Part shown: one piece after another, positions 38,608 through 64,000 of the stretch
Numbering within the stretch: the stretch's first letter is position 1
How the letters are laid out: each line of letters begins with the position of its first letter
Source of the DNA: Selaginella moellendorffii
Lineage: Eukaryota; Plantae; Lycopodiophyta
Assembly (NCBI RefSeq): GCF_000143415.4
Contig: NW_003314274.1
Location: forward strand, 1,065,788-1,129,787
Direction of reading: 5' to 3'
DNA length: 64,000 bases
Program-made: the position numbers and the translations under genes
The notes under the pieces: generated by a model
What the model saw: the letters and a program-made list of their open reading frames with translations, nothing else
What the model was told of the DNA's origin: nothing
The model's database searches: none

Positions 38608-38942
38608 TACCACCACCAATAAATAACACAGCACTAAAGGTGTCCAAACTTGATGTGGTGGGAATGCCAATCCCAATTCCACTCCCAAATCTGCTACTCC
38701 TCACTCCATCACTACTACCATCACCACCACCTCCAGCTTCCCTAGTGATGGAAGCCTCCAAAGCAGATGTGGTAGGAGTTCTTATTCCAGATTTACCTCT
38801 CACTCCACTGCTGTCACCATCATTATCAATGCCACCTCCATCTCCCACACATATAGAAACGTTTGCAGTGGGAGTTCCTATCCCAAATCTTCCCACTCCA
38901 CCACCACCACCGTCACCTTTAGCCCCTCCACCTTCGACTTAA
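38608..38942 (+). pseudogene. Second copy of the Pro-rich tail of the MiAMP1 fusion (no MiAMP1 domain); marks the duplication junction
   Basis: Near-identical to 21150-21482, with TCA where copy 1 has the TAA stop. Confidence 0.85.
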
Positions 38943-39220
38943 ATGACCTTCACCATCACCACCCCAGCTCAAAATGTTGCATTTTCTTTTGTTATGCTGA
39001 CTGTGTCCAAAATCAAAGTATTTGACTTCTGTTGACGTGTCTTTCAGAGTTTCCTATTCCTAGAGAGTTTCTCACGCGAGTTTTAGATTCTTTGGCATCC
39101 AAAATGGTAGGCTTACTTGGTATTCTATGGCTAGTTATCTAAGTAGTGGATGATTCTCCAAGCATAAAAAGGCCCTCCCATTGAGCGACGCTCAAAAGCT
39201 TCATTTAGTTTCAAACGGAA

Positions 39221-39444
39221 ATGGCTATTTCCACAGCTCAAGTCGTGTCTATCACCTACTTGCATTCTTTGTTTTATCAGTTGTTTCATCGGATCCAGAC
39301 AGTGCTTCAAAACATGCCGTGCACCACAGCATGTTGGCGTGGTGACATGAACATGGCCCCCAGCCGTGTTAACACAGGCCATGTTCATTGACTCGGTCAA
39401 TGCTCCAAAACACGGCTCCAAACACGGTTGAAACACGGTCTTGA
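39221..39444 (+). pseudogene. Germin-like copy A2: signal peptide and last codons only; the body is replaced by a 139-bp foreign insert (39300-39438)
   Basis: Matches A1 up to GATCCAGA and again from TCTTGAGTTTTT. Confidence 0.82.
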
Positions 39445-39834
39445 GTTTTTAATAAGATCAACAAATTTTCCATCAAATGTAATAGTTACCTATATTTATC
39501 TATTTAAAAAACGACCCTTGATTGAAATACTCGCAAAATGCCATATGTAAACATCAAACTAGCAAAACATCCTTTCTAATTTCAGGAAGCAAATCCAGTG
39601 GAGAACATTAGTCAATGTTGACTATCTTCGTTGATTTTACCTTGAAGGCTCCCTTGAAATTTCGCAGACTAGATGTTGATCCAAATTCCTTGTTCCAACA
39701 TGGTGGCTCACTCCGAATCATAGCTCAACGTCTGAATTACAGTTCTCAGTATAAATATGGTTCTCCTCCACATATCTAGCATTACATTTCAGCAATACAT
39801 CTACTTAGTCGCAAAAACACTCAAGTTTTTCTCT

Positions 39835-40488
39835 ATGGCTCTCTTCAATTCCCAAGCTCTTTTGTTAGCTTTGCTTGCATTCTTTGTTTTCTCAGTAGTT
39901 TCATCGGACCCAGATCCACTCCAAGACTTTTGTATTGGAGATCCCAGCGTTGTCCCGGGCATCAATGGATTCCCATGCAAGAACCCATCAACAGTCACAG
40001 TAGATGATTTCATCTACAGCGGAATCGTCAACTCCTCTAACACCACAAACATCAATCGCTCCGGTGCCATCTTTGGAACAGCACTGAGGTTTCCTGGTCT
40101 CAACACTTTGGGTCTCTCCATCGCCAGGCTCGACTTCCTTCCCGGAGGAATCATTCCCCCACACACCCATCCCAGAGGCTCGGAGATGGTCTACGTATAA
40201 GAAGGGAGCGTCTACGCCGCCATTGTCACCGCGGACAATCGTTTGTTTGCACGAGTGATGAACAGAGGCGAAGTTATGGTGATTCCCCGAGGATTGATCC
40301 ACTGGCAGATGAACGTTGGAAGAACAAATGCGAAGATCATTGCCACTCTCAACTCCCAATTTCCTGGAATTCAATTTATTGGATCTTCCTTTTTTGGGTC
40401 TCGACCCCAAATCCCAAATGAGGTGCTCGAGAAGACTTTCTTCTTGGACGAGAACACAGTCAATCATGTCCGATCCAACTTTATGTAA
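39835..40488 (+). pseudogene. Germin-like copy B2 with a single nonsense mutation (GAA>TAA at 40198-40200)
   Basis: Full-length germin frame interrupted by one stop at VYV*E, where paralogs read VYVEE. Confidence 0.88.
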
Positions 40489-41113
40489 AATTTGTTATGT
40501 ATTCATTTTTTTTTATAAAAGAAAAAATTTCAAGTCTTGAAATCGTAAGAGCAGGTTGCCCAGCATTTGCTGGCCAATTTCTTGCCAAGACAAAAACTAT
40601 GAATTTCCTTTCAGAGAAGATCACAGGCAACAAATTTCAGATCGTATAATTTCTGTTGGAAGCCTCATTCTCTTCGCATATGAGGCTATGAGCCGTACTT
40701 CGAGTGATTGTATATCCACAAAGATCAATCATAAACTTTGGAGTAGGCAAAGATCATTGTCGAGCTACTTTCACATGATCATGGGTTTAAATCATAGACT
40801 TTTCTTTGTATTAAGACTTTCAGCTCATTAAACTCCTCGATTCAAAACAAAATCAAACACTTTAGCGTCATTACTTCACTTTCACCAAGTTTGACTGCAG
40901 GCTTTTAGCACAACCAAGTTATTGATTAAAATTCTTTTGTCCAACATGGTTGGCTGACTCGGCGTCCAAAATCGTGTTTCACGTTAGCCATCCACGAAAA
41001 AAAATCAGCAAAGTTTCCAGTTATAAAAGCTGGAGTGCTTGGACAGCCAGAGCATTCAGCTTTTATTCAGCCAAGCACACGCATTTCACGTGTGTTTGGA
41101 TGAATGGATGAAA

Positions 41114-41224: not shown

Positions 41225-41335
41225 ATTTATTTAATATCTTCAAACTTAAAATGAAATTTAATTATTGAGCTTCCAGACCGTAAATCGTTGAGCAGAACTT
41301 GGTTGATTCGTCACAGAAGAAGCTTTTGGGTGGAT

Positions 41336-42187
41336 TCATTTCCGGAAGTAGAGGGATGTGAGCAGGGTGCTCTGCTCGACATTGGACATGCGAGCATACA
41401 GGACCTGCTCGTTGACTTGGAGAAGATTAATGAGGTGAATGCACACCATGATTCCATCTCCAACAAGCTCGGAGCTTGTGTCGCCGAACTCGATCTGAAG
41501 CAGGATGTTATGTGCACCAATGTCGTTACTCACGTTGTCCGGATCTCGCCATGTCCCCGAGACGCCCACCTCGGTCACCGCCTTAAAAGCAAAACGCAGA
41601 TCAAGTCGAGCTTAAAACATTCATAGACTAACCTGGAAGAAGTTGAAAGCGTATGCTTTCTTCTGTGGAACTGTGAGAGAAAGAAGCTCTCTTTGATCTC
41701 TGTCAAGGTTCACGCTGCTCTCTGCGTCTCCAAACAGCAGAGCCCACACCATATCCTTTGCATTTTCGAGCAGCATCTTCCCGGATTCCGTTCTGTGTTC
41801 ATCTGAGATAGCGGCAAGGCCTTGGCCTGGCGCATCTTTGGTAAGATACCCTTGCTTTACCAAAATATTCCTCTGGCACTTCGGCCATTTTTCCTTGACC
41901 CATCCCATCAGCACTTCCTCACTGATGCCCCCGCTCTGCTTGAGCCGCGAGATTATGTCCGACTGTGCATCTCCCACGATCTTAGAGACCTTCTCATTCG
42001 ATGCCTTACTGATTTGGCTATCCCTGTGCTTCAAAATGCTGATCCTGTCGCTTGCATTTTTGACACCGATGCTTTTGAGCAGATCATGGTTGAAGTCCGG
42101 GATGTGCTCCCCATTTAGCTCATTCTCATGGAACAGAATGGCATGTTTCTCCATGCTACATGGAGTTAACCAGCTCTTCCAATCCAT
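41336..42187 (-). CDS. SAM-domain protein fused to an uncharacterised C-terminal domain (2 exons, ~266 aa)
   Basis: N-terminus WLTPCSMEKHAILFHENELNGEHIPDFNHDLLKSIGVKNASDRISILK fits the SAM consensus. GT-AG intron at 41582-41632 joins exons 42187-41633 and 41581-41336 in frame. Confidence 0.78.
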
Positions 42188-42579
42188 CTTGCGACTTTGT
42201 GACTCTCCTAATGAGCAATCCGTAAGTGCAGTAATGCTTTAAAAAGATAGAACTGACTTAAGCTGTGGGCCAAAGTTACTTGCACTATATTGAATTATTA
42301 TAATTTAAATAAAATTTATTGTTTTCTACTTGTGAGTGCTCAGAATATGGAAATAAATATATAAAAACAAATAGATTAAATTCAATACTAAAATGCTATG
42401 ATGCTAACTTGTGATTGTTACATTGAATTATCATATTTTATATAAAAATTATTACTTTCCACTTATGAGTGCTTGGGACATGGGAATAAGTATATAAAAA
42501 TGGATGGACCAAATTCAGTTTTAAATGGATGGTCCATGTGCTATAATGCTATAATTAATGTATTACCTAAGTAGGCTAA

Positions 42580-43045
<466 letters not shown>

Positions 43046-46000
43046 TATAAGGGCCAAGTGTACGGCTACGATGCCGTATACTAATATTAGCGTAGTGGGA
43101 TTTTGGTAGCTGTCGGATTGGTTTCAATCCGGACCACTAGCTCCTGTATATAAGTTAGGGTTTTTGGGCTAATTGATATGCACATTTCTATATTCCTTTT
43201 CCATATTCCAAGCCCTCACATTGGTGGAGGTGAGGGGCACTTTTGATTGTCCCTGAGGAGTGCTTGAATTTGGGATTTTGGTTTAGATCTAGCTTTTGCA
43301 TTGTCTAGATCTAGCTTTTTCCATTTCCTTTCTTTTGTTCTTCCTTTTCAGGATTTTGGTTTAGATCTGGCTTTTTGCATTGTCTAGATCTCCCATTTCC
43401 TTCTCGTTTTTTGTCGTTTCTCTTCTTTTGCTCTTTCTTCGTCCGTCTTCATGGCAGATCAGCAATTTCCTCCTTTGACTCTAGAGCAGCAGTTGGTCCA
43501 ATTGCTTGATGCTATGCGCTTGCAATTGAACAACTAAACTCAATTGATGGCGGCATTCACGGCACGTGGTCCAACTCCTCTTGCTCTTGGTGCCAATCCT
43601 CGCGTTCGGCCAGAGTTCTTTCGTGGGAATCCTGAGGATGATGTGTACCATTGGTTCAATCACTTCACGGTGATCACCACATATCATTTTTGGGATGATG
43701 CTCGACGTTTACGTGAGTTTCCCACGTGTCTCCAAGGGACGACATTGCAGTGGTACAATGGATTGAGTGCGGCCACTCGTGAGGATTGGAGTGTTCTTTC
43801 GGACGTCTTCAAACGCGCCTTCAGACATGCCGACGATTGTGACGATGCCTTCCAACATTTGCATCGTCTTCGCCAAGGGCCATCTGAGTCGGTGATGCAA
43901 TTTGGCGTTTGTTTCCGAAGTCTTTTGCTTCGTGCGAAGCCTAATATGTCGGAGCAGATAAAGCTAGGAATGTTATGGCCAGCACTTCGTCAAGATCTTG
44001 TCGGCCTTGTGCATGCACTTGCTCCTGCCACCCTTGATGATGCTCTTCGCTTGGCACAACGTTATGAGACGTCGCCTCTTCCACTTCTCGTTGCACGTCC
44101 TTCCCCTCCACTTCCTATGAGTGATGGTCTTATTCCAATGGAGGTTGATGCTACTGCTACTTGAGTCCAAGGACAAAGGCGAGGACGTGGTCGTGGCCGT
44201 GATGTTCGTTGCTGGGCGTGTGATGAAGTTGGTCATACTTATCGGCGTTGTTGGCGCTTTCCGGATTGGTGACCTCCATTTCCTAGGTGGAGACCTTGGC
44301 TTCAACAACGTCCCATTGGTGTTGCTGTAGTGGAAGGTTTGGACACCGAGATGCATCCGGGAAATGAGGAGTCGTGCGAGTAACAGAGGGACCTTGCGTG
44401 AATAAGTCAATGACCCCTCCATCTTTCTTTCGGGAGTATCATCAAGGGGTTCACTCGGCACCAGTTCATCCAGTGTTTACTTTCCAAGCTCATCTTTATA
44501 ACAAGAGGTCTTCTATTATTCTCTCCATGTTGGTTGATATAGGTTCGAGTTTATCTTCTATTGCTCGACCTGTTGCCACACGTTGTCGTCTACACTTGCG
44601 TTGTGCGGCGAAACCAATTTTCATTCTTTATGGCAACGGCCGTACACATGCATGTGCATGGGATGAGGCAGACCTGGTTGTGCGTGTGGGCGATTTTGAG
44701 TTTGAGTTGCAGTCGTTGCGGGTGGTGCCGAGTCAAGCTTTGACCTCANNNNNNNNNNNNNNNNNNNNNNNNNNNNNNNNNNNNNNNNNNNNNNNNNNNN
44801 NNNNNNNNNNNNNNNNNNNNNNNNNNNNNNNNNNNNNNNNNNNNNNNNNNNNNNNNNNNNNNNNNNNNNNNNNNNNNNNNNNNNNNNNNNNNNNNNNNNN
44901 NNNNNNNNNNNNNNNNNNNNNNNNNNNNNNNNNNNNNNNNNNNNNNNNNNNNNNNNNNNNNNNNNNNNNNNNNNNNNNNCAGTTGACCGGCTCATGACAG
45001 AGTATTCTGATCTCTTTGACTATGACCTATCGTCTAGAGCCAAGATTGCTACATGTCATCCGATTCCAACTGGAGATGCTTGTCAATTCAAAGTTCATGT
45101 TCATCGTCGGTCACCAAAGGAGATCAAGATTTTACGTGCAAATGTCAAGGAGATGTTAGAGAAGGGTGTTATTCAGAAGTCGTGAAGTCCTTGGGCATGT
45201 GAACCTCATCTTGTGACGAAGCCTGATGGGAATATTCGTTTCTGCATTGACTATCGTCCGTTAAACAACATAACGATCCCGGATGTGTACCCTCTTCCTC
45301 ACACTGTTGATCTCTTAGATCATCTGGGGTGAAGTCGTTGGTTCACCAAGCTAGATCTTGCTTCTGGGTACTGGCAAGTACCGATGGCCGAAGAAGATAT
45401 TCCTAAGACTACTTTTCGTACACCATTTGGTTTGTATGAGTTCTTGGTGATGCCATTTGGTTTGAACAATGCTCCAGCAACTTTTCAATGGATGATGGAC
45501 AAAGTTCTTTGCAATATGCCGGAGGTGACTGCTAACTTCATTGATGATGTCTTGATCCACTCGGAGGGGATGTGGGAGGAGCATGTTCGTGATGTTTGTA
45601 AAGTGTTGAATCGGTTATGCGATGTTGGTTTAAAGCTGAAGCGGTCGAAGTGCGTGTTTAGATCCAAGGACACAACTTATCTTGGGTACCGTATTTCTTG
45701 TGATGGTTTGCAAGTTGATCCTGACAAACTTATGGCTGTTCTAAATTTCCCTACTCCAAAGTGTGTGAATGATGTGCAGCACTTCTTGGGCAAGGTGCAG
45801 TATCTCGGGCATTTTGTGGATCATCTTTCTGATCACACCGCACCATTGCGAGCGTTGCTGAAGTCATCAACATCATCTTTCATCTGGTCTCCGGATTGTG
45901 AGGGGGCGTTCGGGGATCTCAAAAAGTTATTGACAACTCCTCCAGTTTTGGCATATCCTGACTACACTCGACTTTTTATTTTGCGCATGGATGCTTCTGA

Positions 46001-48040
46001 CATTGGTCTTGGAGGTGTGTTAATGCAAGAGAGCTCGAGTGTGCCTAGTCAGCGCCATCCCATTGCATATATAAGCCATACATTACAACCAGCGGAGATG
46101 AACTACTCCACGACAGAGAAGGAGTGTTTAGCAGCAGTTTGGGGTTTCGAGAAACTTCATGCATATCTACATGGTTCTCGGACGTTACTTGAAGGTGACC
46201 ATGCTGCTGTTACTTCATTATTAAAGCAGAAGAACCTGGTTGGTCGTACTGCTCGGTGGGTTTTGAAGCTTTAGATATATGATTTTGATGTTGTTCACCT
46301 CCTAGGGAGTTCTATGGCTGATGTTGATGCCCTTTCTCGAGCTCCTCTTCCTTCTCCATTCTCTTCTCATGTTTCTAACGAGCTTGTCGTTCTAGCATCT
46401 GTGGATTTTCTAGATGAGGATTCTGTGCCGTCGGCAGTTGCTGTACTTGACGTTCAGTGTCCACAAGGTACAGAGCAAGATCTACCTTCGCTTGATGAGG
46501 TTCACGAGGCTCAAAAGATTGAGCCACAGATTTGGAGGCTTCGAGATGGGTTTGAGAATCCTGCATCACTTGCTGATGACTTGCCTTTCCGGTATTTACA
46601 TTCTCAATATCGTCTTGAATGTGGCCTTCTTTATTTTGTGGGGACAGATCCTGATAATCATTTACGGCTGGTGGTGCCTTCTATCTTTATTCCGCGGTTT
46701 CTCCATGCCTACCATGATTCTCCTGTTCTAGGTGGGCATATGGGACATCGTTATGTAATCAAGAAGCTACGTAGGTCTTTCTATTGGCCGGAGATGCGAT
46801 GTGATATTATCCGGTATGTGCGTAGCTGCGTTTGGTGCCAAGCTCATAATACTCCCCTTCGGGCTACGGAAGGACGGTTGGAGTCAATTGCAGTTTCCCG
46901 TCCGTTTGAGTTGGTGGCGTTTGATCTTATGGGACTGTTTCCACGGTCAACTATTGGCAATGAGTATGTTATTATTGCTTCTGATTATTTGACTCGTTGG
47001 GTGGAAGTTGGTGCTCTTGCTAGCACCTCTACAATTGCTGTTGGATACTTCCTCCTTAATCGAGTGGTGTTCCAGCATTCTTGTCCAGAGCGGATTTTTT
47101 CGGATAATGGTCCCACATTTATGGCTGAGGCACTTCATGTTTTGACATCTCGGCTAGGGATACGCCACACTTTCACTAGTGCTATCATCCATAATCAGAC
47201 AGTCTGGTGGAATGGCTCGTTCGGACATTCAAGGGGATGATTGCGAAGTATGTGAACTTTCAGCATTTGGATTGGGATGGTTATTTGCCATCTCTTCGGT
47301 ATGCATATGTCACTGGGGTGTAGAGTTCTATTGGTGCTTCACCATATAAACTCCTATATGGTCATGATCCAATATTACCAACGGAGCTGGGTTTACCTTC
47401 GCGATTGCCACGAGCTGCGGATGCTAAGTCATGGGATCAATATTTGACAAGCATTCTTCCACTTGTCCGAGCAGAGTCTGCCGAACACTTAGGCCGCGTA
47501 TAAGTGGGACAACAATGGCGCTACAACTCCCATCATCGTCCACCGGCGGAGTACAAAATGGATGATTTGGTGTTAGTCTGTTTTCCCCATCTTACGGTAC
47601 GTGGTTTATCTAAGGGGCTCCTTGCACAGTGGAAAGGACCGTATCGAGTGTTGTGGCAAGTTGGACCACAAGTTTATGAGGTTCGGCATGATATCCAGCA
47701 GGCCGATCCTCCAGAGATTGTGCATGTACAGCGGTTGAAACGCTTCATACAAAGGGATCAGGAGCAGTTAATACCATCTACAAATCCGCCGATGCTTCCT
47801 CCTCCTCCAGATCCCGGCCCGTCTACAAGAGAACCCTGATGGTCTTCCATTATTCTGAGAGGAGGGGATGATGTGAGGGCCAAGTGTATGGCTACGATGC
47901 CGTATACTAATATTAGCATAGTGGGATTTTGGTAGCCGTTAGATTGGTTTCAATCCGGACCACTCGCTCGTATATATAAGCTAGGGTTTTTAGGCTAATT
48001 GATATGCATATTTCTGTATTCCCTTTCCATATTCCAAGCA

Positions 48041-48046
<6 letters not shown>
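43046..48046 (+). mobile_element. Ty3/Gypsy LTR retrotransposon (R4), defective, inserted in a (TA)n tract
   Basis: 175-bp LTRs at 43046-43220 and 47872-48046. PBS TGGTGGAGGTGAGGGG (tRNA-Ala-like), PPT GAGAGGAGGGGATGA. Contains gag (LRQGPSESV), protease LVDIGSS, RT FIDD, RNase H MDASDIGLGGVL and integrase HDSPVLGGH..C..C / SDNG, with GPY motif and no chromodomain. Assembly gap at 44749-44979. Confidence 0.93.
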
Positions 48047-48114
<68 letters not shown>

Positions 48115-48120
48115 CATAGA
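48047..48120. repeat. (TA)n microsatellite, right flank of R4
   Basis: Perfect TA run. Confidence 0.95.
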
Positions 48121-48122
48121 TA

Positions 48123-49750
48123 TAAAAGATGAAAAAGTGATGATTATAAGTTAGGTGGAACATTTAAAGATCCTACTAAGCAATTATAAATTGCTATAAG
48201 AACTTAAACTCCCACATAATCACCAATATAGTTACTAACAATTATGATAGAAATAAAATCTAAAGTTATAGTATAAATATCAATTGACTATAAACTCTTG
48301 ATGACCCAATTAGAATTACATATGTAACTACTAAATGCTTAAACCAAATCTGAACCAAAGTAAAGGACTTTTAGAGCTGTTAAAGTCTACAAAACACCAC
48401 TGTAACAAATAATTTACCCACTAACCATCTATTAAGACCATTGTTAATTCAAACTCATGACCATTAACAAAATTTATCTATATATCTTCCATTTGGTTAA
48501 GATTTGAGCTTTGTGTTAATTTGAAATTCTAACTTTTGTTCTCATCTAGCACAATACATGGGCACTTCATTCATCTTACATATCAATTCTGTCCCCTTCT
48601 TGAAGGAAAAAAGTTTTGAAACACATTACAATTATCCTCATTTTGCTATTTATATTTAGCCTCACTTTACTATTGTATTCATTTAACCTTATTAAGTTGA
48701 GGTTAAATGTTTTATTTAAACTCATTATGTTCAACCTTACTTTACAATCTATGTTATTTATTCTCATTCCACTACCATATCCACTCATCTTTACTTTATT
48801 GTTAGGGCTAAATTTCTATCCATCCATCCCCTTTATGCCCTCTTTCGAAAAAAGTTTAAGAGTAAAAAAAAAAAGTGGATAAAGAAAAAAAAAGAAAAAG
48901 TGAATAAAGAAGGATTAAAAAAGGAATTTTCAATAACTGTAAAAATGGATATAGAGAAGTAAAAAGAAGATATATATTTAAAGCTTAGATAATAATGGAT
49001 ATGTTATTATAAAATACTCTAGCTACCATAAGATAAATAAGACATTCACAACACTCAACTTTCTCAACATATAACTTAACACTTCATACAAGAAAATATA
49101 TAGAAAAATTCATACTTTCAAAAGAACATAAACTCCACAACAACAATAGTAAAATAAAGTCTTTTAACAGCATTTACAATAAAAAATGCCCACTTAACCC
49201 AAAACTTTAGCAGAAATGATTTAACCCTTAGAACAAAGGATATTCAATATCAAAATTAATCAAATACTCCACAACAAAATAAAAATAAAATTCTCAACTT
49301 CACATATGTTCAATATCTGAATTATTATGAGGAGGATAAAAACACTCAACTCAAATACTGAATTGAGAATGAGAATTATAAAAGTTACAATAATCAATGT
49401 GTTAGAAGAAGGAAATGTTGTAGATAAAGAAGAATACAAAGAATATAAGAAGGTGGGGAAATAACAAAAAGTTTGGAAAAAGCAAAGGTAAAAAGAAAAG
49501 ATCAAATGATAATTTAAAAGATTGACATATATTTTGCAAAATATTTAACTTATCTTCAAATATATCTCTATAATAATCAATCTCCTTGTCACAATTCAAA
49601 ATTCACTCAATTTTTTACACATTATTTTCTCATAAACTCAACCTTTTGAACATTCTCCAAAAACTAAATTGCATCATTTATAACTCTCCAATTAATAGTA
49701 AAGTCATATTTCGACATGGCAAGACAATAAAAATAGAACACACTATATAA
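48123..49750. repeat. AT-rich degenerate repeat, uninterrupted copy
   Basis: Colinear with 25100-26485 plus 38353-38600. Confidence 0.75.
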
Positions 49751-51300
49751 CCATATTTTATGGTAATCATGCCTCACCAAAATCTTAATCTAACAAAGCA
49801 GCATTAATAGCCTCAAATGATAAACTCCTTAATTAATGACAGTGTCACATGACAAAAGAGGAGAATGCAATGGAGATTGAGAATGAAAAATAAATTTATA
49901 GCTATAGTTTTTCTATAATATATTAGTATTATATTTATAATTAAAGATTTTATCAATTGAATAACATTGCTAATATGTAATAAATTATTATAATATTTAT
50001 ATTTTAATATTAATTTTTTATTTACTATAAAAAACTTGTCATTAAGAGAAGAGAAAATGACAAGATTACTAATAAAAACTTTTATCTAATTTGAGTATGG
50101 ATATATGTTATTGTATAATAAGTTTTAAGTTTAAATATCATGAGTAGAAGCTTAGGATTCGATTCCTACCATGGCTAATAGTGGCTCCTCAATAAAAACA
50201 GAGGCATAGTAAATACATAATATCATGCTTCTTTATGATGCTAAGCATAGAGAATGAACTTAAGTATTAATAAGAAGACTAAGTTGGCTAGAACTATTAA
50301 CAACATCGCAATGAGTAATATAAATAGCAACAAAATCAATTATAAGACTAGGTGCTAGAGGAAATAAATATAACTAATGAGAATTAAGATCATAATTGAA
50401 AAATGGAAAGTGATATGTTAGAAATTATTATAAGCAAACTCAGTAAATGAAGGAGATCAAATCAATCACCTTATTGATAGAAATTAAAACATAAAAAATA
50501 TTACTTAAAATTTTTAGAAATACACTCTGATTAGATGGTGAAAAGTCGATAATTTACTTAGGAGGAAAGAAATAAACATTAAAAAAAGTTGGAAGTAAAT
50601 TTATAATCAACTTGTCTTGGTTAAAAATTATTTTGTTGATAAATTAAAATCAAACAGAATTCCTAAAGAGAGTGTACATTCAGATGGACTATTAACTTTG
50701 AGATCAGACCAAAGTTGTTTCTTTTCTAATGCTGGGGTGTAATTTTATAAAAGATTCACTTCATTTAGGCTTGCAACCCACTATTATTATTTTTAATTTT
50801 TTCCTAGAATATGTAAATATATTCAGGCCAAGTCATGTCTGATGTGAAACAATTCTACAGTTATTAGAATACTCAATTGGATTTTAATCTATTCTCTTGC
50901 TCCAGGTTAAATGTAAGCACTTATAAGGGAATTGGCTTGTCCGAGTCATGTTTTCTTTTATTCAGCGTGATTCATAGAGTTAATCACTGAAGTCTATTTG
51001 AGAATGACTGAGATTTGTGTTTTAGATCACTGTGTATTAAATTAAAATCATAAGACCAGAAACACAGAATATTCTCAAAGCAGCTGACTTCGTCCAGCAA
51101 GCTCTACAATTTTCAAAACTCGCTGTTCCAATATAGTTGGCTCACTCGGTTGTCAAATTCTTACAATCCCAGCAACATCCAAGAAACGTACACATTGATA
51201 ATCGTGTAAATTCTCAGTATATATATCTTCTCTTATCCCCAGCAAAATCATTCATTCATCCATCCTTTTCGAGATCCAAAAGTTTTTGATCAGTGAAAAG

Positions 51301-51954
51301 ATGGCTGTTTCCAAATCTCAAGCTCTTGGGATTGCCTTGCTCGCATTCTTCGTCACTGTGGCAGTTTCATCCGATCCAGATCCACTCCAGGACTTTTGCA
51401 TTGGAGACCTCACCGCTGTCCCAGGCGTCAATGGGTTCCCATGCACGAACTCCTCGACAGTCACGGTGGACGATTTCATCTACAGCGGCATCGTCAATTC
51501 TTCCAACACCACGAACATCAATCGCTCCGGCGCCATCTTTGGGACAGTGCTGAGGTTCCCTGGTCTCAACACTTTGGGTCTCTCCATCGCCAGGCTCGAC
51601 TTCCTCCCCGAAGGAATCATCCCCCCACACACCCATCCCAGAGCCTCGGAGATGGTCTACGTAGAAGAGGGCAGCGTCTACGCCGCCATCGTCACCGCGG
51701 ACAATCGCTTGTTTGCTCGTGTCATGAACAGGGGCGAAGTCATGGTGATTCCTCGCGGATTGATCCACTGGCAGATGAATGTTGGGACTGGCAACGCGAA
51801 GATCATTGCCACTCTCAACTCCCAGCTGCCTGGAATCCAGTTCATCGCGAGATCCATGTTTGGTTCCCGTCCAGAGGTCCCAGACGAGGTGCTCGAGAAG
51901 ACCTTCTTCTTGGACGAGGCCGCTATCAATCAAGTCCGATCCAACTTTGTTTGA
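51301..51954 (+). CDS. Germin-like protein copy D (intact)
   Basis: Signal peptide, SDPDPLQDFC, PPHTHPRASE and GEVMVIPRGLIHWQMN. TATA-like TATATATA at ~51218. Confidence 0.95.
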   Translation: MAVSKSQALGIALLAFFVTVAVSSDPDPLQDFCIGDLTAVPGVNGFPCTNSSTVTVDDFIYSGIVNSSNTTNINRSGAIFGTVLRFPGLNTLGLSIARLDFLPEGIIPPHTHPRASEMVYVEEGSVYAAIVTADNRLFARVMNRGEVMVIPRGLIHWQMNVGTGNAKIIATLNSQLPGIQFIARSMFGSRPEVPDEVLEKTFFLDEAAINQVRSNFV

Positions 51955-52389
51955 TCTTATCAGTAGCAAAGTTCTTCTTCTTGTATAATCTTATCCATTT
52001 GTTCTTTTCAATCGATCATTCTTCGTATAATATCTGTAGAGCAAAAAACATCCAAGGAAACGTTTGCTTGGATAGAAAGAGTGACCTACCCGGAGCTTCC
52101 ATCCAAGAGCCAAATCGAAAGGCGCCACCTGGCATTACGCCGTGGTATATTCTATCCCAGGAAGGGAGAGTCCTAAAGTGTGTTCTTTGGATCTATTTTG
52201 TTCCTCCGCCCTCCCTCCAGCTCGCCGCCGCCGGCAAAAGCGTCGCATCCGCCGGCGCCATCGCCATCGCCATCGCCTGTAGAAGCGCAGGTAAATCTTT
52301 CCCTTCTTGATCGATCCGCCTCGATCGAGCCTCGCCGGATTTCGAAAGGTCATTATCTCACGATCTTTGCTCAGAAGCGCAAGATCCGA

Positions 52390-54458
52390 ATGGCGTTCGA
52401 GAAGATCAAGGTGGAGAATCCCATCGTGGAGATGGACGGTGAGTGAGGAGATATTTTTGTTCTTTTCCTCTACAGGATCGCTCACATTTCTATACTTTTT
52501 CGGTTTCTTCCTTGCAGGAGATGAGATGACCCGGATCATCTGGCAAATGATCAAGGACAAGGTTTTGTCACGCGCTCTTTTTTCCCTTGTCCACATTTTT
52601 TTTCTTCTCTTCCATAGATTTTAACTTGGCCCATTCTTGCAGCTCATTTTTCCATTCCTTGATTTGGATATTAAATACTTTGACTTGGGCCTTCCACATC
52701 GTGACGAAACTGATGACAAAGTCACAGTTGAGAGTGCCGAAGCGACCCTCAAGTAACATACATATCCTTTTCTTTTTTACTGGAAAAATCTGTTTCTTCC
52801 CAATTGTAAAGGTACAATGTTGCGATCAAGTGTGCAACGATCACGCCAGGTACACCGGTGCGTTTGTGCTCGTAGTTTCCTTCTCATGCTTTGCGTATGG
52901 ATTTTGGCTATCAGACGAAGCTCGAGTCAAGGAATTCGGCCTCAAGGCAATGTGGAAAAGTCCCAATGGGACAATTCGTAACATTTTGAACGGTAAGACA
53001 CAGACTTTGGTGGATGGCATGTCTTACGTGCAGTGTGACGCGCAGGGACTGTTTTTAGAGAGCCGATTGTCTGCAAGAACGTCCCGAGGCTTGTTCCAGG
53101 TGAGTGTTAGCGGCGTTTCCTTTTACTTTTGTTTACTACGACGAACTCCAGGGTGGACGAAACCAATTTGCATTGGAAGGCATGCTTTTGGAGACCAGTA
53201 TCGTGCCACTGATACAGTTATCAAGGGCTCTGGAAAGCTTAAGCTGGTTTTTGGTAAGAAGAAAACTGGATTTTCTCTTTTTTTTTACCTTTTGTTTACT
53301 CTGCTGTGCAGTGCCTGAGAATGGAGAGGCCTCTGAATTCGAGGTTTACGACTTCAAGGGAGATGGAGGAGTCGCTCTTTCTATGTACAACACTGATGAG
53401 GTTCGGGTGTCTGTTGCAGTAAGTCTTCTATAACGTTTGAGTTTGTAACAGTCCATTCGTTCCTTTGCACAAGCCTCTATGACTACCGCTCTGGCAAAGA
53501 AGTGGCCTCTATACTTGAGCACCAAAAACACGATTTTGAAGAAGTACGATGGCAGGTAAAAGTTTTCAGATGGTAATTCGTGGATACAATCTCTAAGCTA
53601 CAGAAGTTATCAGGTTTAAGGATATCTTCCAAGAGGTCTACGAGGCGGAGTGGAAGAGCAAGTTTGAGGAAGCTGGCATCTGGTTTGTTTTGAATTTATA
53701 TGTTTGCGACCTGCTTACGTTTTATCTACAGGTACGAGCATCGCCTGATTGACGATATGGTTGCTTATGCTCTCAAGAGCGATGGTGGATATGTCTGGGC
53801 ATGCAAAAACTACGATGGTGATGTGCAGAGCGACTTTTTGGCTCAAGGTACATTAATACATTCTCTCTGTCATAGAGACTAAGCATGCCTGTGGCAGGAT
53901 TTGGTTCCCTTGGATTGATGACTTCTGTGCTGGTGAGCCTATAGTGATGGTTTTTCTTTCTTCTTCCACTAATTTTGCTTTCACAGGTCTGTCCCGATGG
54001 AAAGACCATTGAAGCCGAAGCTGCTCACGGGACTGTAACTCGGCACTATAGAGTACACCAGAAAGGCGGTGAAACCAGCACCAATAGCATTGCCTCCATC
54101 TTTGCCTGGTCTCGAGGCCTTTCTCACAGGCATGTATTAGTTTCCCTCTCTTTCCTCGTATAATATTTGCTTTGCTAAACAGGGCCTCACTGGATGGCAA
54201 TGCACGGCTAAGCGACTACGCGGAGAAGCTCGAGGCGGCTTGCGTAGGAATCGTTGAGTCTGGCAAAATGACAAAGGATCTCGCTCTGCTCATCCACGGG
54301 CCAAAGTAAGATAGATTTTTCAGCTTTCCTTTGGATTTTTCGCGACTGTTTTGTTGTGCAGGGTGACAAAGAAAGATTATCTTAACACCGAGGAGTTTAT
54401 CGATGCCGTGGCTGCCGATCTTAAGCTCAGGCTGACAACCGTGCCTTCCAAATTGTAA
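52390..54458 (+). CDS. ICDH: NADP-dependent isocitrate dehydrogenase, cytosolic type with C-terminal PTS1 (-SKL)
   Basis: [60 protein letters not shown] and [13 protein letters not shown]. Ends TVPSKL* (TAA at 54456-58). Confidence 0.96.
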
Positions 54459-55209
54459 AGCCGGCTCCCGATTTCTCAGTTAGATATTTTTTCTCTACTT
54501 ATGGTGGAGGTGCTCGGGTATTTCAACAGACCACTGATTTCTTATCTCTCATTGTCACAGGGAAGCCTGAGCAAACACGGCTGGAAATTCTATTTTTTTT
54601 ACTATCCATCCGGACAATCTCCCTCAAATAACTTCGTTCTTATATACTTAAAAATAATTATTAACACGGACATTTGTTTTCGGGCCATTTCATAGTAGAT
54701 TATTTTCTAACATTTCGCTAGGCACGAGGACTATGGTTATCCAAGGATCAAGCGAGAGGTCGTTCATCAGGTCTGGCGACGGGAATCTAAATTGGATAAC
54801 GCTTCGCCATGTAAGACAATTAAAGCAAGGTCAAGAACATGAGATATGCTATGTGACAATATCTTCTAAACTTTTTTCTTGATATTAGATTTTTCATGAA
54901 GCCGTCGGAGTGGATTTCTACTTGGGAGAAAGGAGGAAGCGTTAGCGTTGCATTTTTTAACGCTTAGCGCAGACCTTTAGAAGCCACAAAGCCTTTCAAA
55001 CCAAGTCTTTCATAAGCAGGTAGCTCTTTTTTTATGCCTTTTGCATTTTTTTTTTTAAATTTTTTTTTTTATGATTCCAGTTCTTCCTTATTCTAAACGT
55101 TTTTATTTTTTCTTATTTTTATTTTTGTAGCTCGACATGCCTCCACCAAGAGCTCAGCTTCGCCTCCCACGCTTGGTAACTGCATGCTTGAGCTTTATTG
55201 CTTTGTATT

Positions 55210-55333
55210 GGCATTATGGTCTGATTCTTGTAGTTTATCATGCACCACCCCGTTTGCAGCCTCCAGCTTGAAATGGAACTGGAGCCGAGGCTGCAAAGGG
55301 GATGGCGCATGATAAAAATCAGACCGTAATGCC
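55210..55333. ncRNA. Candidate miRNA-precursor-like hairpin (124 nt)
   Basis: Three paired helices: GGCATTATGGTCTGATT/AATCAGACCGTAATGCC, TTTATCATGCACCACCCC/GGGGATGGCGCATGATAAA and TTTGCAGCCTC/GAGGCTGCAAA. Intergenic. Confidence 0.5.
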
Positions 55334-55749
55334 CCCTAATCCATCCCCTATGTAGCCTTCCACTCCTTTCTTCTGGAAAGAAAGATTTCCTTTCTTAAGG
55401 AGAAAGAAGAAAACATCTTTCTCCTGGTGGGAACTGGTTGTGAGAGATGGGGTGATGGGGCAGCACACTAGGTTGCTTAACCAGCTGCATCACCAGCACT
55501 CGGCTCCTGTTTCCACTGATGTCTGTAGCAAGCATTCCAAGAAGTATGGTTTTTCTTGCATTTCACAAAACTTCTGATTTCGATTTAAAATAGAAAAGAG
55601 GTTTCCAAAATTAAAATCTAATATAGCTCAAATCTTATTTTATAAAATTATCAGTTGTTCAGATAAACATAACTCTAGACCAGTATATAAGATCATTGAA
55701 TTGAATTGCATTTTTGTATCAAATCATTTTGTTATCTTCATTTGTCTCA

Positions 55750-56585
55750 ATGGCTTTTCGTTTTTTTGTTTTTTATTCTTTTTTCTTTGCTCGTGATTTA
55801 TGGTAATGCTCGTAATTTTGAACAAAAATTGTGTCCTACTGGAATCCTTAGCTTTTCTGATTCGCTTTTGGATACTGGTAATCGCAACCTCGAGGCAGTA
55901 GCAGCAGGCCTAGGTGCATTCAGTCTTTCTGGACATTTACCATATGGAATTACATTGGGAAAACCCAATGGAAGATTTTGTGATGGGTATGTATTTATTG
56001 GTTATTTAGCTCTTCAATTGAAGTTGGGTGATATTGAGCCCCTCCTTATTTCACAAGCTTTAATTTTGGTTATGCTGGAGCAACTGTTCATTCACCTAGT
56101 GTTATAACACATCTTTTGCTACTCCTCATATATTGTCTGCTCAAGTTTCAGATTTTATATGGCATAAACAACAAGTTAATGATCATCAAAATGGTGCTAA
56201 ACTTGATAAGAAAATGCTATATGAAAAAGCACTTTATTATATTGAAATTGGTGGCAATGATCTTGGTTATGGAATGCCAGATTTTGCATATGTGATGAAT
56301 ATTACAATTCCAGCTGTAGTTAAGGGCATCAAATCTAATATTATGGATTTATATAATTCTGATGCAAAATATTTTATGGTAATGAATCTTCCTCGTTATG
56401 ATTGTGCTCCTAGTTATTTACAACTACTTTCATGCTACTGGGATGCATTATGATAAACTTGGATGTCTTGTTCAGGCTAGAAATACTATTGATTTATTTA
56501 ATAAGTTATTGGATATGGTAAATGATATTAACAATCAAAATGATGATATTGAAGTATATTATTTTGATTGGTTTTCTGCAATACT
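55750..56585 (+). pseudogene. GDSL esterase/lipase pseudogene (intronless, frameshifted, 3'-truncated)
   Basis: Block I FSDSLLDTGN, block II PYGITLGKPNGRFCDG and block III LYYIEIGGNDL, in three different frames. Block V is absent. Confidence 0.85.
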
Positions 56586-60475: not shown

Positions 60476-63400
60476 TGGTTGGGCGACGGGCATGGGATAG
60501 AGCCACTAAAGACATCATTCGGAGCGTTCAATGGCGGAAGTTTAAGGTGGAGGGTGCCATTTCCAGGATTGCGGTGCAATAGGGTAGCAGTACACCGGCC
60601 ACCTCCAGAGTTCTCTTTTGTGGGTCGATCGGAATATGCTTCCTCCATGAGATGATACGGCTTCTGTGGGTTAATCATAACAGGTGCCAAGGGTTCAGGC
60701 AAGAGCTGCCTCCTGTGCGCGCTTGCAATTGAGCTCATTTGCCACTTATCCTAGCGTGAGAGAGTAGTTTGCATCTGGCACTTCAATGCTTGCGATGATC
60801 TCCGACTCCAGGTTCAGGAGTTTCTTATTTTTACATTCTATGACACTGACAAAGATGTCATTGAGATGATTCTAGATATCTCTTGTCCCACAGACCTTGC
60901 CGGTTCTTGTTGGACAAAAGAGCAATCGGGGATTTGTCAACCGTATATATGGTTGTATTTTCACACTTGAGGTTGCTTTTGTGAGTACTGATATATTTTT
61001 GAGCTAGAAAAAGGTGAAAAGGGAAGAAGCTCGTTAAAGAAGCTTCCTGGGAATATTCTGTCTAGAGAGAGAGAAAGTTACGGATTTCAGAAGTGAGAAT
61101 TTGAAGAAGTTGTTTTCTATAAAGTTGAAGATCTTATCAAGGGAAGTTCTTTGGTGGTGAAATCAAGTTGATCGAAGTTGTGGATGAAGAGTTATTAGTT
61201 GGAAAAGTCTCAACCATTGGTTGGTGTTTAAGTTTTTGGTAGTTTGAAAATTAGGCATGGCCATTCAGTTTTTTTATAGTTCTTGTTCTTGTTTTCTCTC
61301 TCTGGTTCTTGAGTTCTTTCTGCTCGAAGATGGTGGGACCTCCCATAGGCCGTCGAGATCCTGTTGCCGATTGCATCGCCAACAACATGCGGATAAGGCA
61401 CGCAATCGAGGAGCTGAGAATTCGAGAGGAGCAGCAAATTCCAACTACCTGTCCAACCTGTGGTCAAGTGTGGTACTGTTACTTACGCGTGATCATAGAG
61501 GAGTTACTACAGGCCCAGTGCACTTAGTATGAGTGATTTGTAGTTACTGCTAAAATACAAGCCCTAGGGGAGTCTTTCCAGTCTTTCTTTATTATCGTGT
61601 ATTTTTCCTGACATTTTTGGTGTGTTAGCCAGGAGGGCTTAGTTGCAATAACTGCACAGTAAATAGGGCCTGAGGAAAAGGCCAGTCATCTGCAAGCATC
61701 TGCAGTAAGCATCCTTTGCCGCAGCTGGTTCTCGGTCTGGTGGGTAGATCCCCGGACTGGGATAATTTTCTAGATTTTTCTACTAGGAGGGTAGAGCAGA
61801 ATTGAGGCCAGTCTGAACGAGCAGTGAGGAGACTGTTACAGAACTCGCCTGAAACCAATCCTGAGAACGGCCATTGGCANNNNNNNNNNNNNNNNNNNNN
61901 NNNNNNNNNNNNNNNNNNNNNNNNNNNNNNNNNNNNNNNNNNNNNNNNNNNNNNNNNNNNNNNNNNNNNNNNNNNNNNNCTAGCCTCCTAGTAGAAAAAT
62001 CTAGAAAATTATCCCAATCCGGGGTTCTTCCCACCAGACCGAGAACCAGCTGCGGCAAAGGATGCTTACTGCAGATGCTTGCAGATGACTGGCCTTTTCC
62101 TCAGGCCCTATTTACTGTGCAGTTACTGCAACTAAGCCCTCCTGGCTAACACACCAAAAAATGTCAGGAAAAATACACGATAATAAAGAAAGACTGGAAA
62201 GACTCCCCTAGGGCTTGTATTTTAGCAGTAACTACAAATCACTCATACTAAATGCACTGGGCCTGTAGTAACTCCTCTATGATCACGCATAAGTAACAGT
62301 ACCACACTTGACCACAGGTTGGATAGGTAGTTGGAATTTGCTGCTCCTCTCGAATTCTCAGCTCCTCGATTGCGTGCCTTATCCGCATGTTGTTGGCGAT
62401 GCAATCGGCAACAGGATCTCGACAACCTATGGGAGGTCCCACCATCTTCGAGCAGAAAGAACTCAAGAACCAGAGAGAGAAAACAAGAACAAGAACTGTA
62501 AAAAAACTGAATGGCCATGCCTAATTTTCAAACTATCAAAAACTTAAACACCAACTAATAGTTGAGACTTTTTTAGTTAATAACTCTTCATCCACAACTT
62601 TGATCGACTTGATTTCACCACTAAAGAACTTCCCTTGATAAGATCTTCAACTTTCAAATTCTCACTTCTGAAATCCATCTCTCTCTCTCTCTAGACAGAA
62701 TATTCCCAGGAAGCTTCTTTAGCGAGCTTCTTCCCTTTTCACCTTTTTCTAGCCTGTACTCACAAAAGCAACCTCAAGTGTGAAAATACAACCATATATA
62801 CAGTTGACAGGATTACATTACTCTGCTTTGCGATGGCCAAGAGAAGTTAAATGCATTGCGCTGGGATCGTTCAGAACACACACCTGAAGAACAGGAAAGG
62901 AGAAACTAGATGACTGCCCTCGACTACTACTCTGACGTCGTAGTTAAGGCTTTGTCACTTGAAGCTGTTGATGCGCAGGGCATCCGAAATACCATGCAGC
63001 GGTATGAGCTGAGGTATGTTGTCTTTGGCCACGTAATAGTTCTCCTGCCATACTTCGCTTACTAAATTTTATGTGCAGAACACGTATACTTCATACTCGG
63101 CACCGCATCTGTGCTCAAGGGCTTTGTTCGCAATGGATCTTTTTGCACCAGCTATCTCCATGCAGTACATGCAGAAGCGGCTTTAGAGTGCTTGAAGGGC
63201 ACAGTCTATCGCTCACCAGAGTTCAAGAACAACCTTCTGCACAAACTCAAGAAAGCCAACGTGATTTGGCCGGAAGTGGGGTGGGCTTGCGAGGGTTTTG
63301 TCGGAGAGGCTATCCAGGCTATCGGGTTGAACTTCCAAGGGAACAAATCGAAGTGTTCAAGCTGGAGGCTTTAAAGGGTGAACCAGCAGTGATCAGGCCA

Positions 63401-63727
63401 TATCAATGGAAGCCGCACCAGGCAAGATACATGTTGCCTGGGAAGTACTCGTTCAAGTATGTCGATGGCATGCTAGCGTGGGTAAACGAGCAGCGAGTGT
63501 TACATATCCTTGCACTGCAGGTGACTGTTAGTCCGGAAACACACAGGAAGACAGAGTACAAGTTTGTGATGCAAGGAGAGGTTCAACGCTGGTATACTGG
63601 ACACCGCGTGGTGCACTATGTGTACATCTGCCCAGGCCCGACCAAGCGCGCAGCTGTTTCACACAGTGCAGAGGTAGCGTACACGACGCATGAGCTTGAG
63701 CTTTACCAACCTAATCGACATTCTTAA
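60476..63727 (+). pseudogene. Crinkler/RHS-type P-loop NTPase + restriction-endonuclease-fold gene, decayed and split by an insertion
   Basis: VPFP...FSFVGRSEY...LIITGAKGSGKSCLL (Walker A at 60683-60706)...RVVCI. Across the insertion the frame reads GDYITLLCDG (Walker B-like). C-terminal YMLPGKYSFKYVDG...LALQVTVSPETH is an REase-like D...QxT..H motif. Several stops and frameshifts. Confidence 0.68.
60935..62809. mobile_element. Insertion with terminal inverted repeats of at least 830 bp, TGT...ACA ends and 5-bp TSD; centre is an assembly gap
   Basis: 60935-61794 is the reverse complement of 61980-62809, with scattered differences. GGATT at 60930-60934 and 62810-62814. N gap at 61880-61979. 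Confidence 0.88.
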
Positions 63728-64000
63728 GAAGCTGGGCAACCTGAGAAAGGTAGAAGTGGAACGAAGGAGAAAAGCACGTCTCATGTACCAGCGTGGCGAT
63801 CAAGCTAGTGTTAAGACCATTCCCCATGAGAAGCAGAAACTCTTGAAAAAGGCCTAGGAACAGCCCCACGGAGCCAGGGCATGGCTGGAAAACGAATGCC
63901 GGACCGAGCGCAAGTATGGTATTCGTGGGAAGCAGTACCCAAATGTGTACTCCCTCCTCTCCAGGCAATGACCGTCTAGTTTGATACTTCCAATCCAGAG

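What the first reader, a model, noticed from the sequence alone, without database searches (positions are those of the whole stretch)
60930..62814. Unclassified transposon-like element: integrase-style ends (TGT...ACA, 5-bp TSD) but very long terminal INVERTED repeats
Seen: the element starts TGTCAACCGTATATATGG at 60935 and ends CCATATATACAGTTGACA at 62809, flanked by a perfect GGATT duplication. The arms are reverse complements over at least 830 bp, up to the N gap, and differ by substitutions and small indels, so they are not one read placed twice. Removing the element rejoins the host NTPase frame (AIGD-YITLLCDG), which supports a real insertion. Known: TG..CA ends with a 5-bp TSD typify DDE integrases of LTR retroelements, whose repeats are direct. 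Integrase-using DNA transposons (Ginger/TDD types, plant GingerRoot) have much shorter TIRs as I recall, and Polintons have different termini. Inference: either a new long-TIR integrase-type DNA element, possibly much larger than shown because the gap length is unknown, or an aberrant head-to-head LTR integration.
Basis: partly seen in the sequence, partly recalled or inferred. Interest (0 to 1): 0.85.

Follow-up and report, generated by a model that had tools for sequence, protein, structure and literature searches.

The report
Foldback insertion with LTR-like ends
A 1.9-kb piece of non-coding mobile DNA, made almost wholly of one long inverted repeat, sits inside a decayed NTPase gene of the spikemoss Selaginella moellendorffii. 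Its ends and 5-bp target duplication look like the work of a retrotransposon-type integrase, but only this one copy could be examined, so it may be a new transposon family or a one-off accident.

Summary
Window 60935-62809 is an insertion with ends TGTCAAC...GTTGACA and a perfect 5-bp duplication (GGATT). Its two arms (60935-61794 and 61980-62809) are reverse complements. They differ by 27 substitutions (24 of them transitions) and four indels of 1-17 nt. The window is Selaginella moellendorffii scaffold GL377578.1. The host is an unannotated, decayed member of a lineage-specific STAND-type P-loop NTPase family. A paralogue on GL377583.1 runs uninterrupted across the insertion point and carries one GGATC where the window has two GGATT. 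That shows a true insertion, a true target duplication and a correct scaffold join. The arms have no protein, RNA-family or tRNA signal. The centre is unresolved: 85 unique nt, then 100 N. A classic LTR retrotransposon in the same window (32556-37772) has the same end signature (TGTCAAG...CTTGACA, 5-bp duplication). An integrase-type enzyme is therefore the likely inserter, which is an inference. No second copy could be reached with the tools here. Three readings remain open: a non-autonomous long-TIR family (about 0.45), a single aberrant integration of LTR-derived DNA with two identical ends (about 0.3), or something else. It fits no named family. Interest is moderate.

The parts
60536..60934 (+). 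Left part of the host gene: a decayed STAND-type P-loop NTPase with Walker A motif GAKGSGKS. It is not annotated in this haplotype.
   Evidence: tblastn matches of P0138, P0139, P0143 and P0144. The Walker A piece gives weak P-loop Pfam hits below the cut-offs. No gene is called here.
60930..60934 (.). Left copy of the 5-bp target-site duplication, GGATT.
   Evidence: It aligns to the single GGATC of paralogue L004.
60935..61794 (+). Left arm of the inverted repeat. The outer end is TGTCAACC.
61795..61879 (+). Continuation of the left contig with no known partner. It is either more arm, with its partner hidden in the gap, or part of a central loop.
   Evidence: It folds no better than shuffled sequence (z = -0.07).
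61880..61979 (.). Assembly gap of 100 N at or near the centre of symmetry.
61980..62809 (-). Right arm of the inverted repeat. The outer end is ...GTTGACA on the + strand.
62810..62814 (.). Right copy of the 5-bp target-site duplication, GGATT.
62810..63962 (+). Right part of the host NTPase pseudogene. It runs to, or beyond, the end of the window.
   Evidence: tblastn matches of P0136-P0144. phmmer hit to P0136 at 83% identity, E = 1.5e-62.

Best explanation
It is a real, non-coding, foldback-type mobile insertion of about 1.9 kb as scaffolded. A DDE enzyme of the retroviral-integrase kind placed it in the coding part of a STAND-type NTPase (pseudo)gene. The enzyme acted on two identical ends (TGTCAAC...) and cut the target with a 5-bp stagger. 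The insertion, the duplication, the ends, the inverted architecture and the lack of coding capacity are shown. The class of enzyme is inferred. My preferred reading of its origin is a non-autonomous long-TIR element that moves as DNA and depends on an integrase-like transposase or integrase made elsewhere in the genome. Its arms have since decayed by C-to-T type transitions and small deletions. If transcribed through from the host gene, it would fold into a hairpin of about 860 bp. That is a consequence of its shape, not a demonstrated function.
For: The insertion and duplication are proven by the uninterrupted paralogue. The flank order matches the family proteins. The ends TGTCA fit the TGTNR pattern reported for Gypsy LTRs and Ginger elements, and a 5-bp TSD is reported for LTR retrotransposons and for TDD-4/TDD-5 (PMC2836005, PMC10045372). 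A bona fide LTR retrotransposon in the same window has the ends TGTCAAG...CTTGACA and a 5-bp TSD, so enzymes with this end and stagger signature have been active in this genome. Integrase-related DNA transposons exist in the genus (GingerRoot in S. lepidophylla, PMC6839031). The arms are about equal in length. If they are symmetric, the hidden part of the right arm would nearly fill the stated gap, as expected for a foldback derivative. The arms show no ORF with a homologue, no Pfam or Rfam hit and no tRNA. The 24:3 transition bias is typical of silenced repeats.
Against: Only one copy was seen. There is none elsewhere in the 64-kb window or in about 150 kb of other S. moellendorffii loci, although that sample is far too small to count against a family. 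No integrase-like transposase partner was identified. Arms of at least 830-945 bp are several times longer than the TIRs of any described integrase-type DNA transposon. No subterminal repeat pattern of the kind many DNA transposons carry was found. A one-off origin explains the same facts.
Confidence: 0.45

Rival explanations
1. It is a one-off aberrant product of an LTR retrotransposon. The integrated DNA carried the same LTR end at both termini. Either two separate incomplete LTR DNAs were inserted together and their inner ends were joined by host repair, or a snap-back (self-primed) reverse-transcription product was copied into a palindrome. The element's own integrase then inserted it with the usual 5-bp duplication.
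For: The ends and TSD match those of an LTR retrotransposon in the same window. LTR retrotransposons dominate the repeats seen here. A purified LTR-retrotransposon integrase (Ty1) carries out concerted integration of two separate donor DNAs that bear the same LTR end (U3 only or U5 only) in vitro (PMC8487063), so two identical ends are an acceptable substrate in principle. If the two arms came from two different templates, they could have differed from the start. There is no coding capacity and no second copy.
Against: No primer-binding-site-like or polypurine-like neighbour was found, and nothing resembles the inner neighbours of the two LTR elements in the window. The arm matches neither of those elements' LTRs. 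Two independently truncated DNAs would not be expected to give nearly equal arms. I found no report of such a structure arising in vivo.
Confidence: 0.3
2. It is a non-autonomous TIR element of a non-integrase superfamily, or of an undescribed one. The 5-bp duplication and TGT...ACA ends only mimic the integrase signature.
For: Long-TIR and foldback derivatives arise in several cut-and-paste superfamilies (general knowledge). The enzyme class is inferred from ends and TSD alone.
Against: The TSD lengths and end motifs reviewed place the combination of 5 bp and TGT...ACA with LTR elements and Ginger2/TDD. The flanks allow no longer or shorter duplication.
Confidence: 0.1
3. It is an ordinary solo LTR from a family whose LTR is itself a long palindrome.
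For: TG...CA ends, a 5-bp TSD and no internal genes are all solo-LTR features.
Against: U3 and U5 would be complementary over more than 800 nt. The element's RNA would then be a long double strand, which makes a propagating family unlikely (inference). No such LTR was seen in the window.
Confidence: 0.07
4. It is an assembly artefact: a mis-oriented or collapsed contig joined across the gap.
For: A gap lies exactly at the centre. The arm-to-arm divergence (3.3%) is similar to the haplotype divergence measured on a true allelic pair.
Against: Each junction lies inside its own contig. Reading inward from either flank gives the same 830 nt. The flanks continue one gene in the correct order and strand, and a paralogue is continuous across the site. 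The arms differ by indels, so they are not the same reads. A central gap is what a true long inverted repeat would be expected to produce in a clone-based Sanger assembly (inference).
Confidence: 0.05

Closest known systems
LTR retrotransposons (solo LTR or full element), e.g. the element at window 32556-37772
   Same: TGTCAA... ...TTGACA ends and a 5-bp target duplication. The insertion chemistry is that expected of a retroviral-type integrase.
   Different: The repeats are inverted rather than direct. There is no gag-pol and no recognisable primer-binding or polypurine site. Both outer ends are the same LTR-like terminus.
[quoted passage not shown]
   Same: TGTNR termini, a 5-bp TSD (TDD-4/5), terminal inverted repeats and DNA-level mobility through a Gypsy-integrase-like transposase.
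   Different: Reported TIRs are 50-180 bp, against at least 830 bp here. No transposase was found. The group is not reported from land plants. The target here (GGATT) is not the AT-rich RTATAY preferred by Ginger2.
GingerRoot / IS3EU (Selaginella lepidophylla; PMC6839031)
   Same: An integrase-related DNA transposon in the same genus, with TIRs and occasional TG...CA ends.
   Different: The TSD is 6-8 bp and never 5 in 77 intact copies. Ends are mostly TA...TA. TIRs are 100-150 bp. Elements are 3.9-12.9 kb and coding.
Foldback-type or long-TIR non-autonomous transposons (Drosophila FB, Galileo, Arabidopsis FARE; from my own knowledge)
   Same: Almost the whole element is one inverted repeat with little or no unique centre, and it is non-coding.
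   Different: As I recall, those families make 7-9 bp duplications and belong to other superfamilies. Their arms often hold internal tandem repeats, which are absent here.
Polinton/Maverick
   Same: Long TIRs and a retroviral-type integrase.
   Different: They have a 6-bp TSD, AG...TC ends and a 15-20 kb coding body. They are not known in land plants.
DIRS-like retroelements (from my own knowledge)
   Same: Inverted terminal repeats.
   Different: They use a tyrosine recombinase, make no target duplication and code for proteins. Here the duplication is proven.

Membership tests
LTR retrotransposon / solo LTR | 5'-TG...CA-3' termini | tested here: met
   TGTCAAC...GTTGACA.
LTR retrotransposon / solo LTR | Target-site duplication of 4-6 bp, usually 5 | tested here: met
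   GGATT on both sides. A paralogue has a single GGATC at that position.
LTR retrotransposon / solo LTR | Long terminal repeats in direct orientation, flanking a primer-binding site, a polypurine tract and gag-pol. For a solo LTR, one non-palindromic LTR whose family has such full copies. | tested here: not met
   The repeats are inverted. There is no Pfam hit, no tRNA and no neighbour resembling the inner neighbours of the window's LTR elements. Full copies elsewhere could not be searched.
Ginger2/TDD | TGTNR termini | tested here: met
   TGTCA at both ends. The pattern is from PMC2836005.
Ginger2/TDD | 4-bp TSD (5 bp in TDD-4/5) | tested here: met
   5 bp.
Ginger2/TDD | TIRs of roughly 50-180 bp | tested here: not met
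   The arms are at least 830 and 860 bp.
Ginger2/TDD | An integrase-like transposase (H2C2 zinc finger plus DDE) in the element or in an autonomous partner in the same genome | not testable with these tools
   There is no ORF with a homologue in the element. S. moellendorffii transposon proteins are not in the protein collection, and no plant-genome DNA search is available.
GingerRoot / IS3EU | 6-bp (6-8 bp) TSD | tested here: not met
   The TSD here is 5 bp.
GingerRoot / IS3EU | TA...TA termini (rarely TG...CA) and TIRs of 100-150 bp | tested here: not met
   TG...CA ends alone would be tolerated, but the arms are at least 830 bp.
Polinton/Maverick | 6-bp TSD, AG...TC termini, and protein-primed polymerase and capsid genes | tested here: not met
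   5-bp TSD, TG...CA ends and no coding capacity in the known sequence.
Foldback / long-TIR non-autonomous DNA transposon (descriptive class) | The element consists almost wholly of two long inverted arms, carries a TSD and has no coding capacity | tested here: met
Foldback / long-TIR non-autonomous DNA transposon (descriptive class) | Several genomic copies with different target duplications | not testable with these tools
   No copy in the window or in about 150 kb of other loci. Metagenome scans were empty.
DIRS-like retroelement | No target-site duplication, and tyrosine-recombinase and RT genes | tested here: not met
   The TSD is proven and there are no genes.

The most novel reading that the evidence does not exclude
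The element is the first seen member of a long-TIR, integrase-type DNA transposon lineage in a lycophyte, with TGTCA ends and a 5-bp duplication as in TDD-4/5 but arms five to ten times longer. Put another way, it is a natural case of LTR-like ends in inverted orientation being competent for integration. Bao, Kapitonov and Jurka (PMC2836005) postulated that arrangement for the origin of Ginger TIRs from LTRs.
Probability: 0.3. Interest if true: 0.7.

Novelty: new variant of a known kind. Interest (0 to 1): 0.5.

Why it matters
Integrase-type DNA transposons are rare in plants, and how they relate to LTR retrotransposons is an open question. A family with LTR-like ends in inverted orientation and a 5-bp duplication would be a concrete link between the two modes of mobility, in a lineage where a different integrase-related transposon (GingerRoot) is already known. 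If it is instead a one-off, it would be in-genome evidence that an LTR-element integrase can insert DNA with two identical ends, which is otherwise known mainly from test-tube assays. In either case a hairpin of about 860 bp inside a gene is a likely source of double-stranded RNA. The case also shows why long inverted repeats leave gaps in clone-based assemblies.

Tried and rejected
1. I looked for other copies through the arm's ORFs. Two frames searched against 5.8 billion proteins gave nothing. Pfam gave only noise.
2. Rfam and tRNA scans of the element and the window were empty.
3. Two exact-pattern scans of JGI metagenome contigs gave 0 hits.
4. I tried to sample transposon-rich Selaginella loci through transposon proteins. 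This failed because the collection holds no S. moellendorffii transposon proteins: the best hit to the window's gypsy RT was 47% and came from other organisms. Those hits were not used further.
5. I looked for the other haplotype's empty site. A germin one residue different led to GL377613.1 (L003), which is collinear with window 41301-56581. Collinearity ends before the site.
6. I sampled about 150 kb of other loci through NTPase paralogues and found no arm copy. Two look-ups found no record.
7. A scan for other TGT...ACA inverted ends with a 5-bp duplication found only this element and LTR element A, which is no more than the shifted controls gave.
8. Subterminal or tandem repeats in the arms are weak: only AAGTTG four times.
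9. Folding of the central 180 nt is no better than shuffles.
10. The inner neighbours of the window's two LTR elements do not occur in the element.
11. A literature search for inverted-LTR insertions found nothing relevant.
12. Rejected by the proven 5-bp TSD and the end motif: MULE/FARE-type foldback, hAT, CACTA, Harbinger, Tc1/mariner, Polinton and DIRS.

Full report
Source and setting. An exact protein look-up places the window on Selaginella moellendorffii assembly GCA_000143415.2, scaffold GL377578.1. Cluster members carry S. moellendorffii names. The neighbouring genes are plant genes: PPR, BAHD acyltransferase, GH95, germins, isocitrate dehydrogenase and a WD40 gene. The window has two gaps, of 231 N and 100 N.

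The observation. The stated start, end and duplication are all present. The arms 60935-61794 and 61980-62809 are reverse complements. Of 829 aligned columns, 802 are identical. There are 24 transitions, 3 transversions (K2P 0.034) and four indels of 12, 2, 17 and 1 nt. The inverted repeat ends exactly at TGT/ACA. The left contig goes on for 85 nt with no known partner and then meets the gap. If the arms are symmetric, the hidden part of the right arm would nearly fill the stated 100 N. That would make an almost loop-less foldback of about 1.9 kb. This is consistent with the data but not shown.

The gap and the scaffold join. A phmmer search with a reading-frame piece from the right flank found a family of uncharacterised S. 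moellendorffii proteins of about 700-740 residues. They show weak AAA_16 / nSTAND-NTPase signals. In tblastn, residues 33-140 of P0138 match the left flank (60554-60868, including the Walker A motif GAKGSGKS). Residues 161-690 match the right flank from 62811 on, in the same strand and order. The 22 codons left between 60868 and the insertion fit the 20 residues missing from the P0138 alignment. A paralogue on GL377583.1 (locus L004) is uninterrupted here, and both GGATT copies of the window align to its single GGATC. The two contigs therefore belong together in this order and orientation. The element is a true insertion and the 5 bp are a true target duplication. I compared the two flanks as separate pieces. 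The host is not annotated in this haplotype. It carries an in-frame stop and frame changes relative to its family, so it is best called a pseudogene.

What the element contains. It contains nothing recognisable. The arms' ORFs have no homologue among 5.8 billion proteins and no Pfam domain above noise. There is no Rfam family, no tRNA, no tandem or clear subterminal repeats, and no copy of the sequences that lie just inside the LTRs of the window's two retrotransposons. One stretch (61231-61530) is free of stops in five of six frames, which points to base composition rather than coding. All differences between the arms in the longest frames change the amino acid or are neutral without pattern. 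The 8:1 transition bias suits a silenced repeat.

Who inserted it. This part is inference. TGTNR ends with a 4-6 bp duplication are the signature of LTR-retrotransposon integrases and their DNA-transposon relatives. In the same window, a classic but decayed LTR retrotransposon lies at 32556-37772. It has gag and protease remnants and 387-bp LTRs that are 94.3% alike. It has a 5-bp duplication (GGCAA) and the ends TGTCAAG...CTTGACA. Those ends share their first six bases with the finding. Sharing three bases beyond TGT is weak evidence on its own (1 in 64). It does show that enzymes with this signature worked in this genome.

Family or accident. I could not settle this. No tool here searches plant genomes by nucleotide, S. 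moellendorffii transposon proteins are absent from the protein collections, metagenome scans were empty, and about 150 kb of other S. moellendorffii loci hold no arm copy. I prefer the reading of a non-autonomous long-TIR element moved in trans (0.45). The equal arms and small centre are what foldback derivatives look like. Integrase-related DNA transposons exist in the genus. A member of a multi-copy family is also more likely to turn up in a given window than a unique accident. The main rival (0.3) is a single aberrant integration of LTR-derived DNA with the same end on both sides. Its chemistry is plausible, because purified Ty1 integrase joins two separate donors carrying the same LTR end to a target in a concerted way. 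I found no in-vivo precedent for it. The minor rivals are a TIR element of another superfamily (0.1), a palindromic solo LTR (0.07) and an assembly artefact (0.05).

Comparison with known groups. The element passes the end and duplication tests for LTR elements and for Ginger2/TDD. It fails the architecture test for LTR elements, because its repeats are inverted. It fails the TIR-length test for Ginger2, with at least 830 bp against 50-180 bp. It fails GingerRoot (6-8 bp TSD, TA ends), Polinton (6 bp, AG..TC ends) and DIRS (no TSD). It meets the purely descriptive definition of a foldback element. I therefore rate it a new variant of a known kind, pending a copy census.

Other loci. L003 (GL377613.1) is collinear with window 41301-56581 at 87-96% identity and lacks the gypsy element of about 43.05-48.05 kb. 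A true allelic pair (L007/L008) is 96.5-97.6% identical. L003 may therefore be the other haplotype or a recent duplicate. Its collinearity ends before the insertion site, so presence or absence in the second haplotype is unknown.

Disclosure. I did not put it into any tool call, note or result. The primer-binding-site test used only sequences taken from the window. Animal retroelement proteins returned were not fetched, aligned or used.

Noticed in passing
window 32556-37772: A decayed LTR retrotransposon on the minus strand, with gag and aspartyl-protease remnants and fragmentary ORFs (the breaks were not counted). It has 387-bp LTRs that are 94.3% alike, a 5-bp TSD (GGCAA) and ends TGTCAAG...CTTGACA. 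Those ends share their first six bases with the ends of the finding.
   Followed up: partly
window about 43045-48050 (gap 44749-44979): A Ty3/gypsy element with RT-RNaseH and integrase ORFs and LTRs of about 175-190 bp that are 91% alike. It lies in a TA-rich microsatellite with an 8-bp period (42495-43050). It is absent from the collinear block L003 (GL377613.1), so it is a presence/absence difference between haplotypes or duplicates.
   Followed up: partly
window 21200-24800, 38700-40500, 51300-51950: An array of germin-like genes, at least five copies with one inverted. There is also a duplicated block, 21.2-23.1 kb against 38.7-40.5 kb, at 92-99% identity. The 90% protein cluster has 22 S. 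moellendorffii members on several scaffolds.
   Followed up: partly
window 56581 / L003 14856: Collinearity between the window and GL377613.1 stops abruptly inside a GDSL-lipase-like gene. The next 5.8 kb of L003 (a 264-aa gene and a U-box/ARM gene) have no counterpart in the window. The cause is unknown: a structural variant, a duplication boundary or an assembly join.
   Followed up: no
window 60536-63962; P0136-P0144; loci L004-L008: A lineage-specific family of proteins of about 700-740 aa in S. moellendorffii. They have an N-terminal STAND-like P-loop and no other Pfam domain, and several truncated or decayed copies exist. The family seems uncharacterised.
   Followed up: partly
window 61231-61530: About 250-280 nt of the arm lack stop codons in five of six frames, yet have no protein homologue.
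   Followed up: yes
L007 vs L008 (GL377568.1 / GL377590.1): A true allelic pair of 22-kb loci is only 96.5-97.6% identical by blastn and shows local rearrangement around 9-13 kb. This gives a measure of haplotype divergence in this assembly.
   Followed up: no
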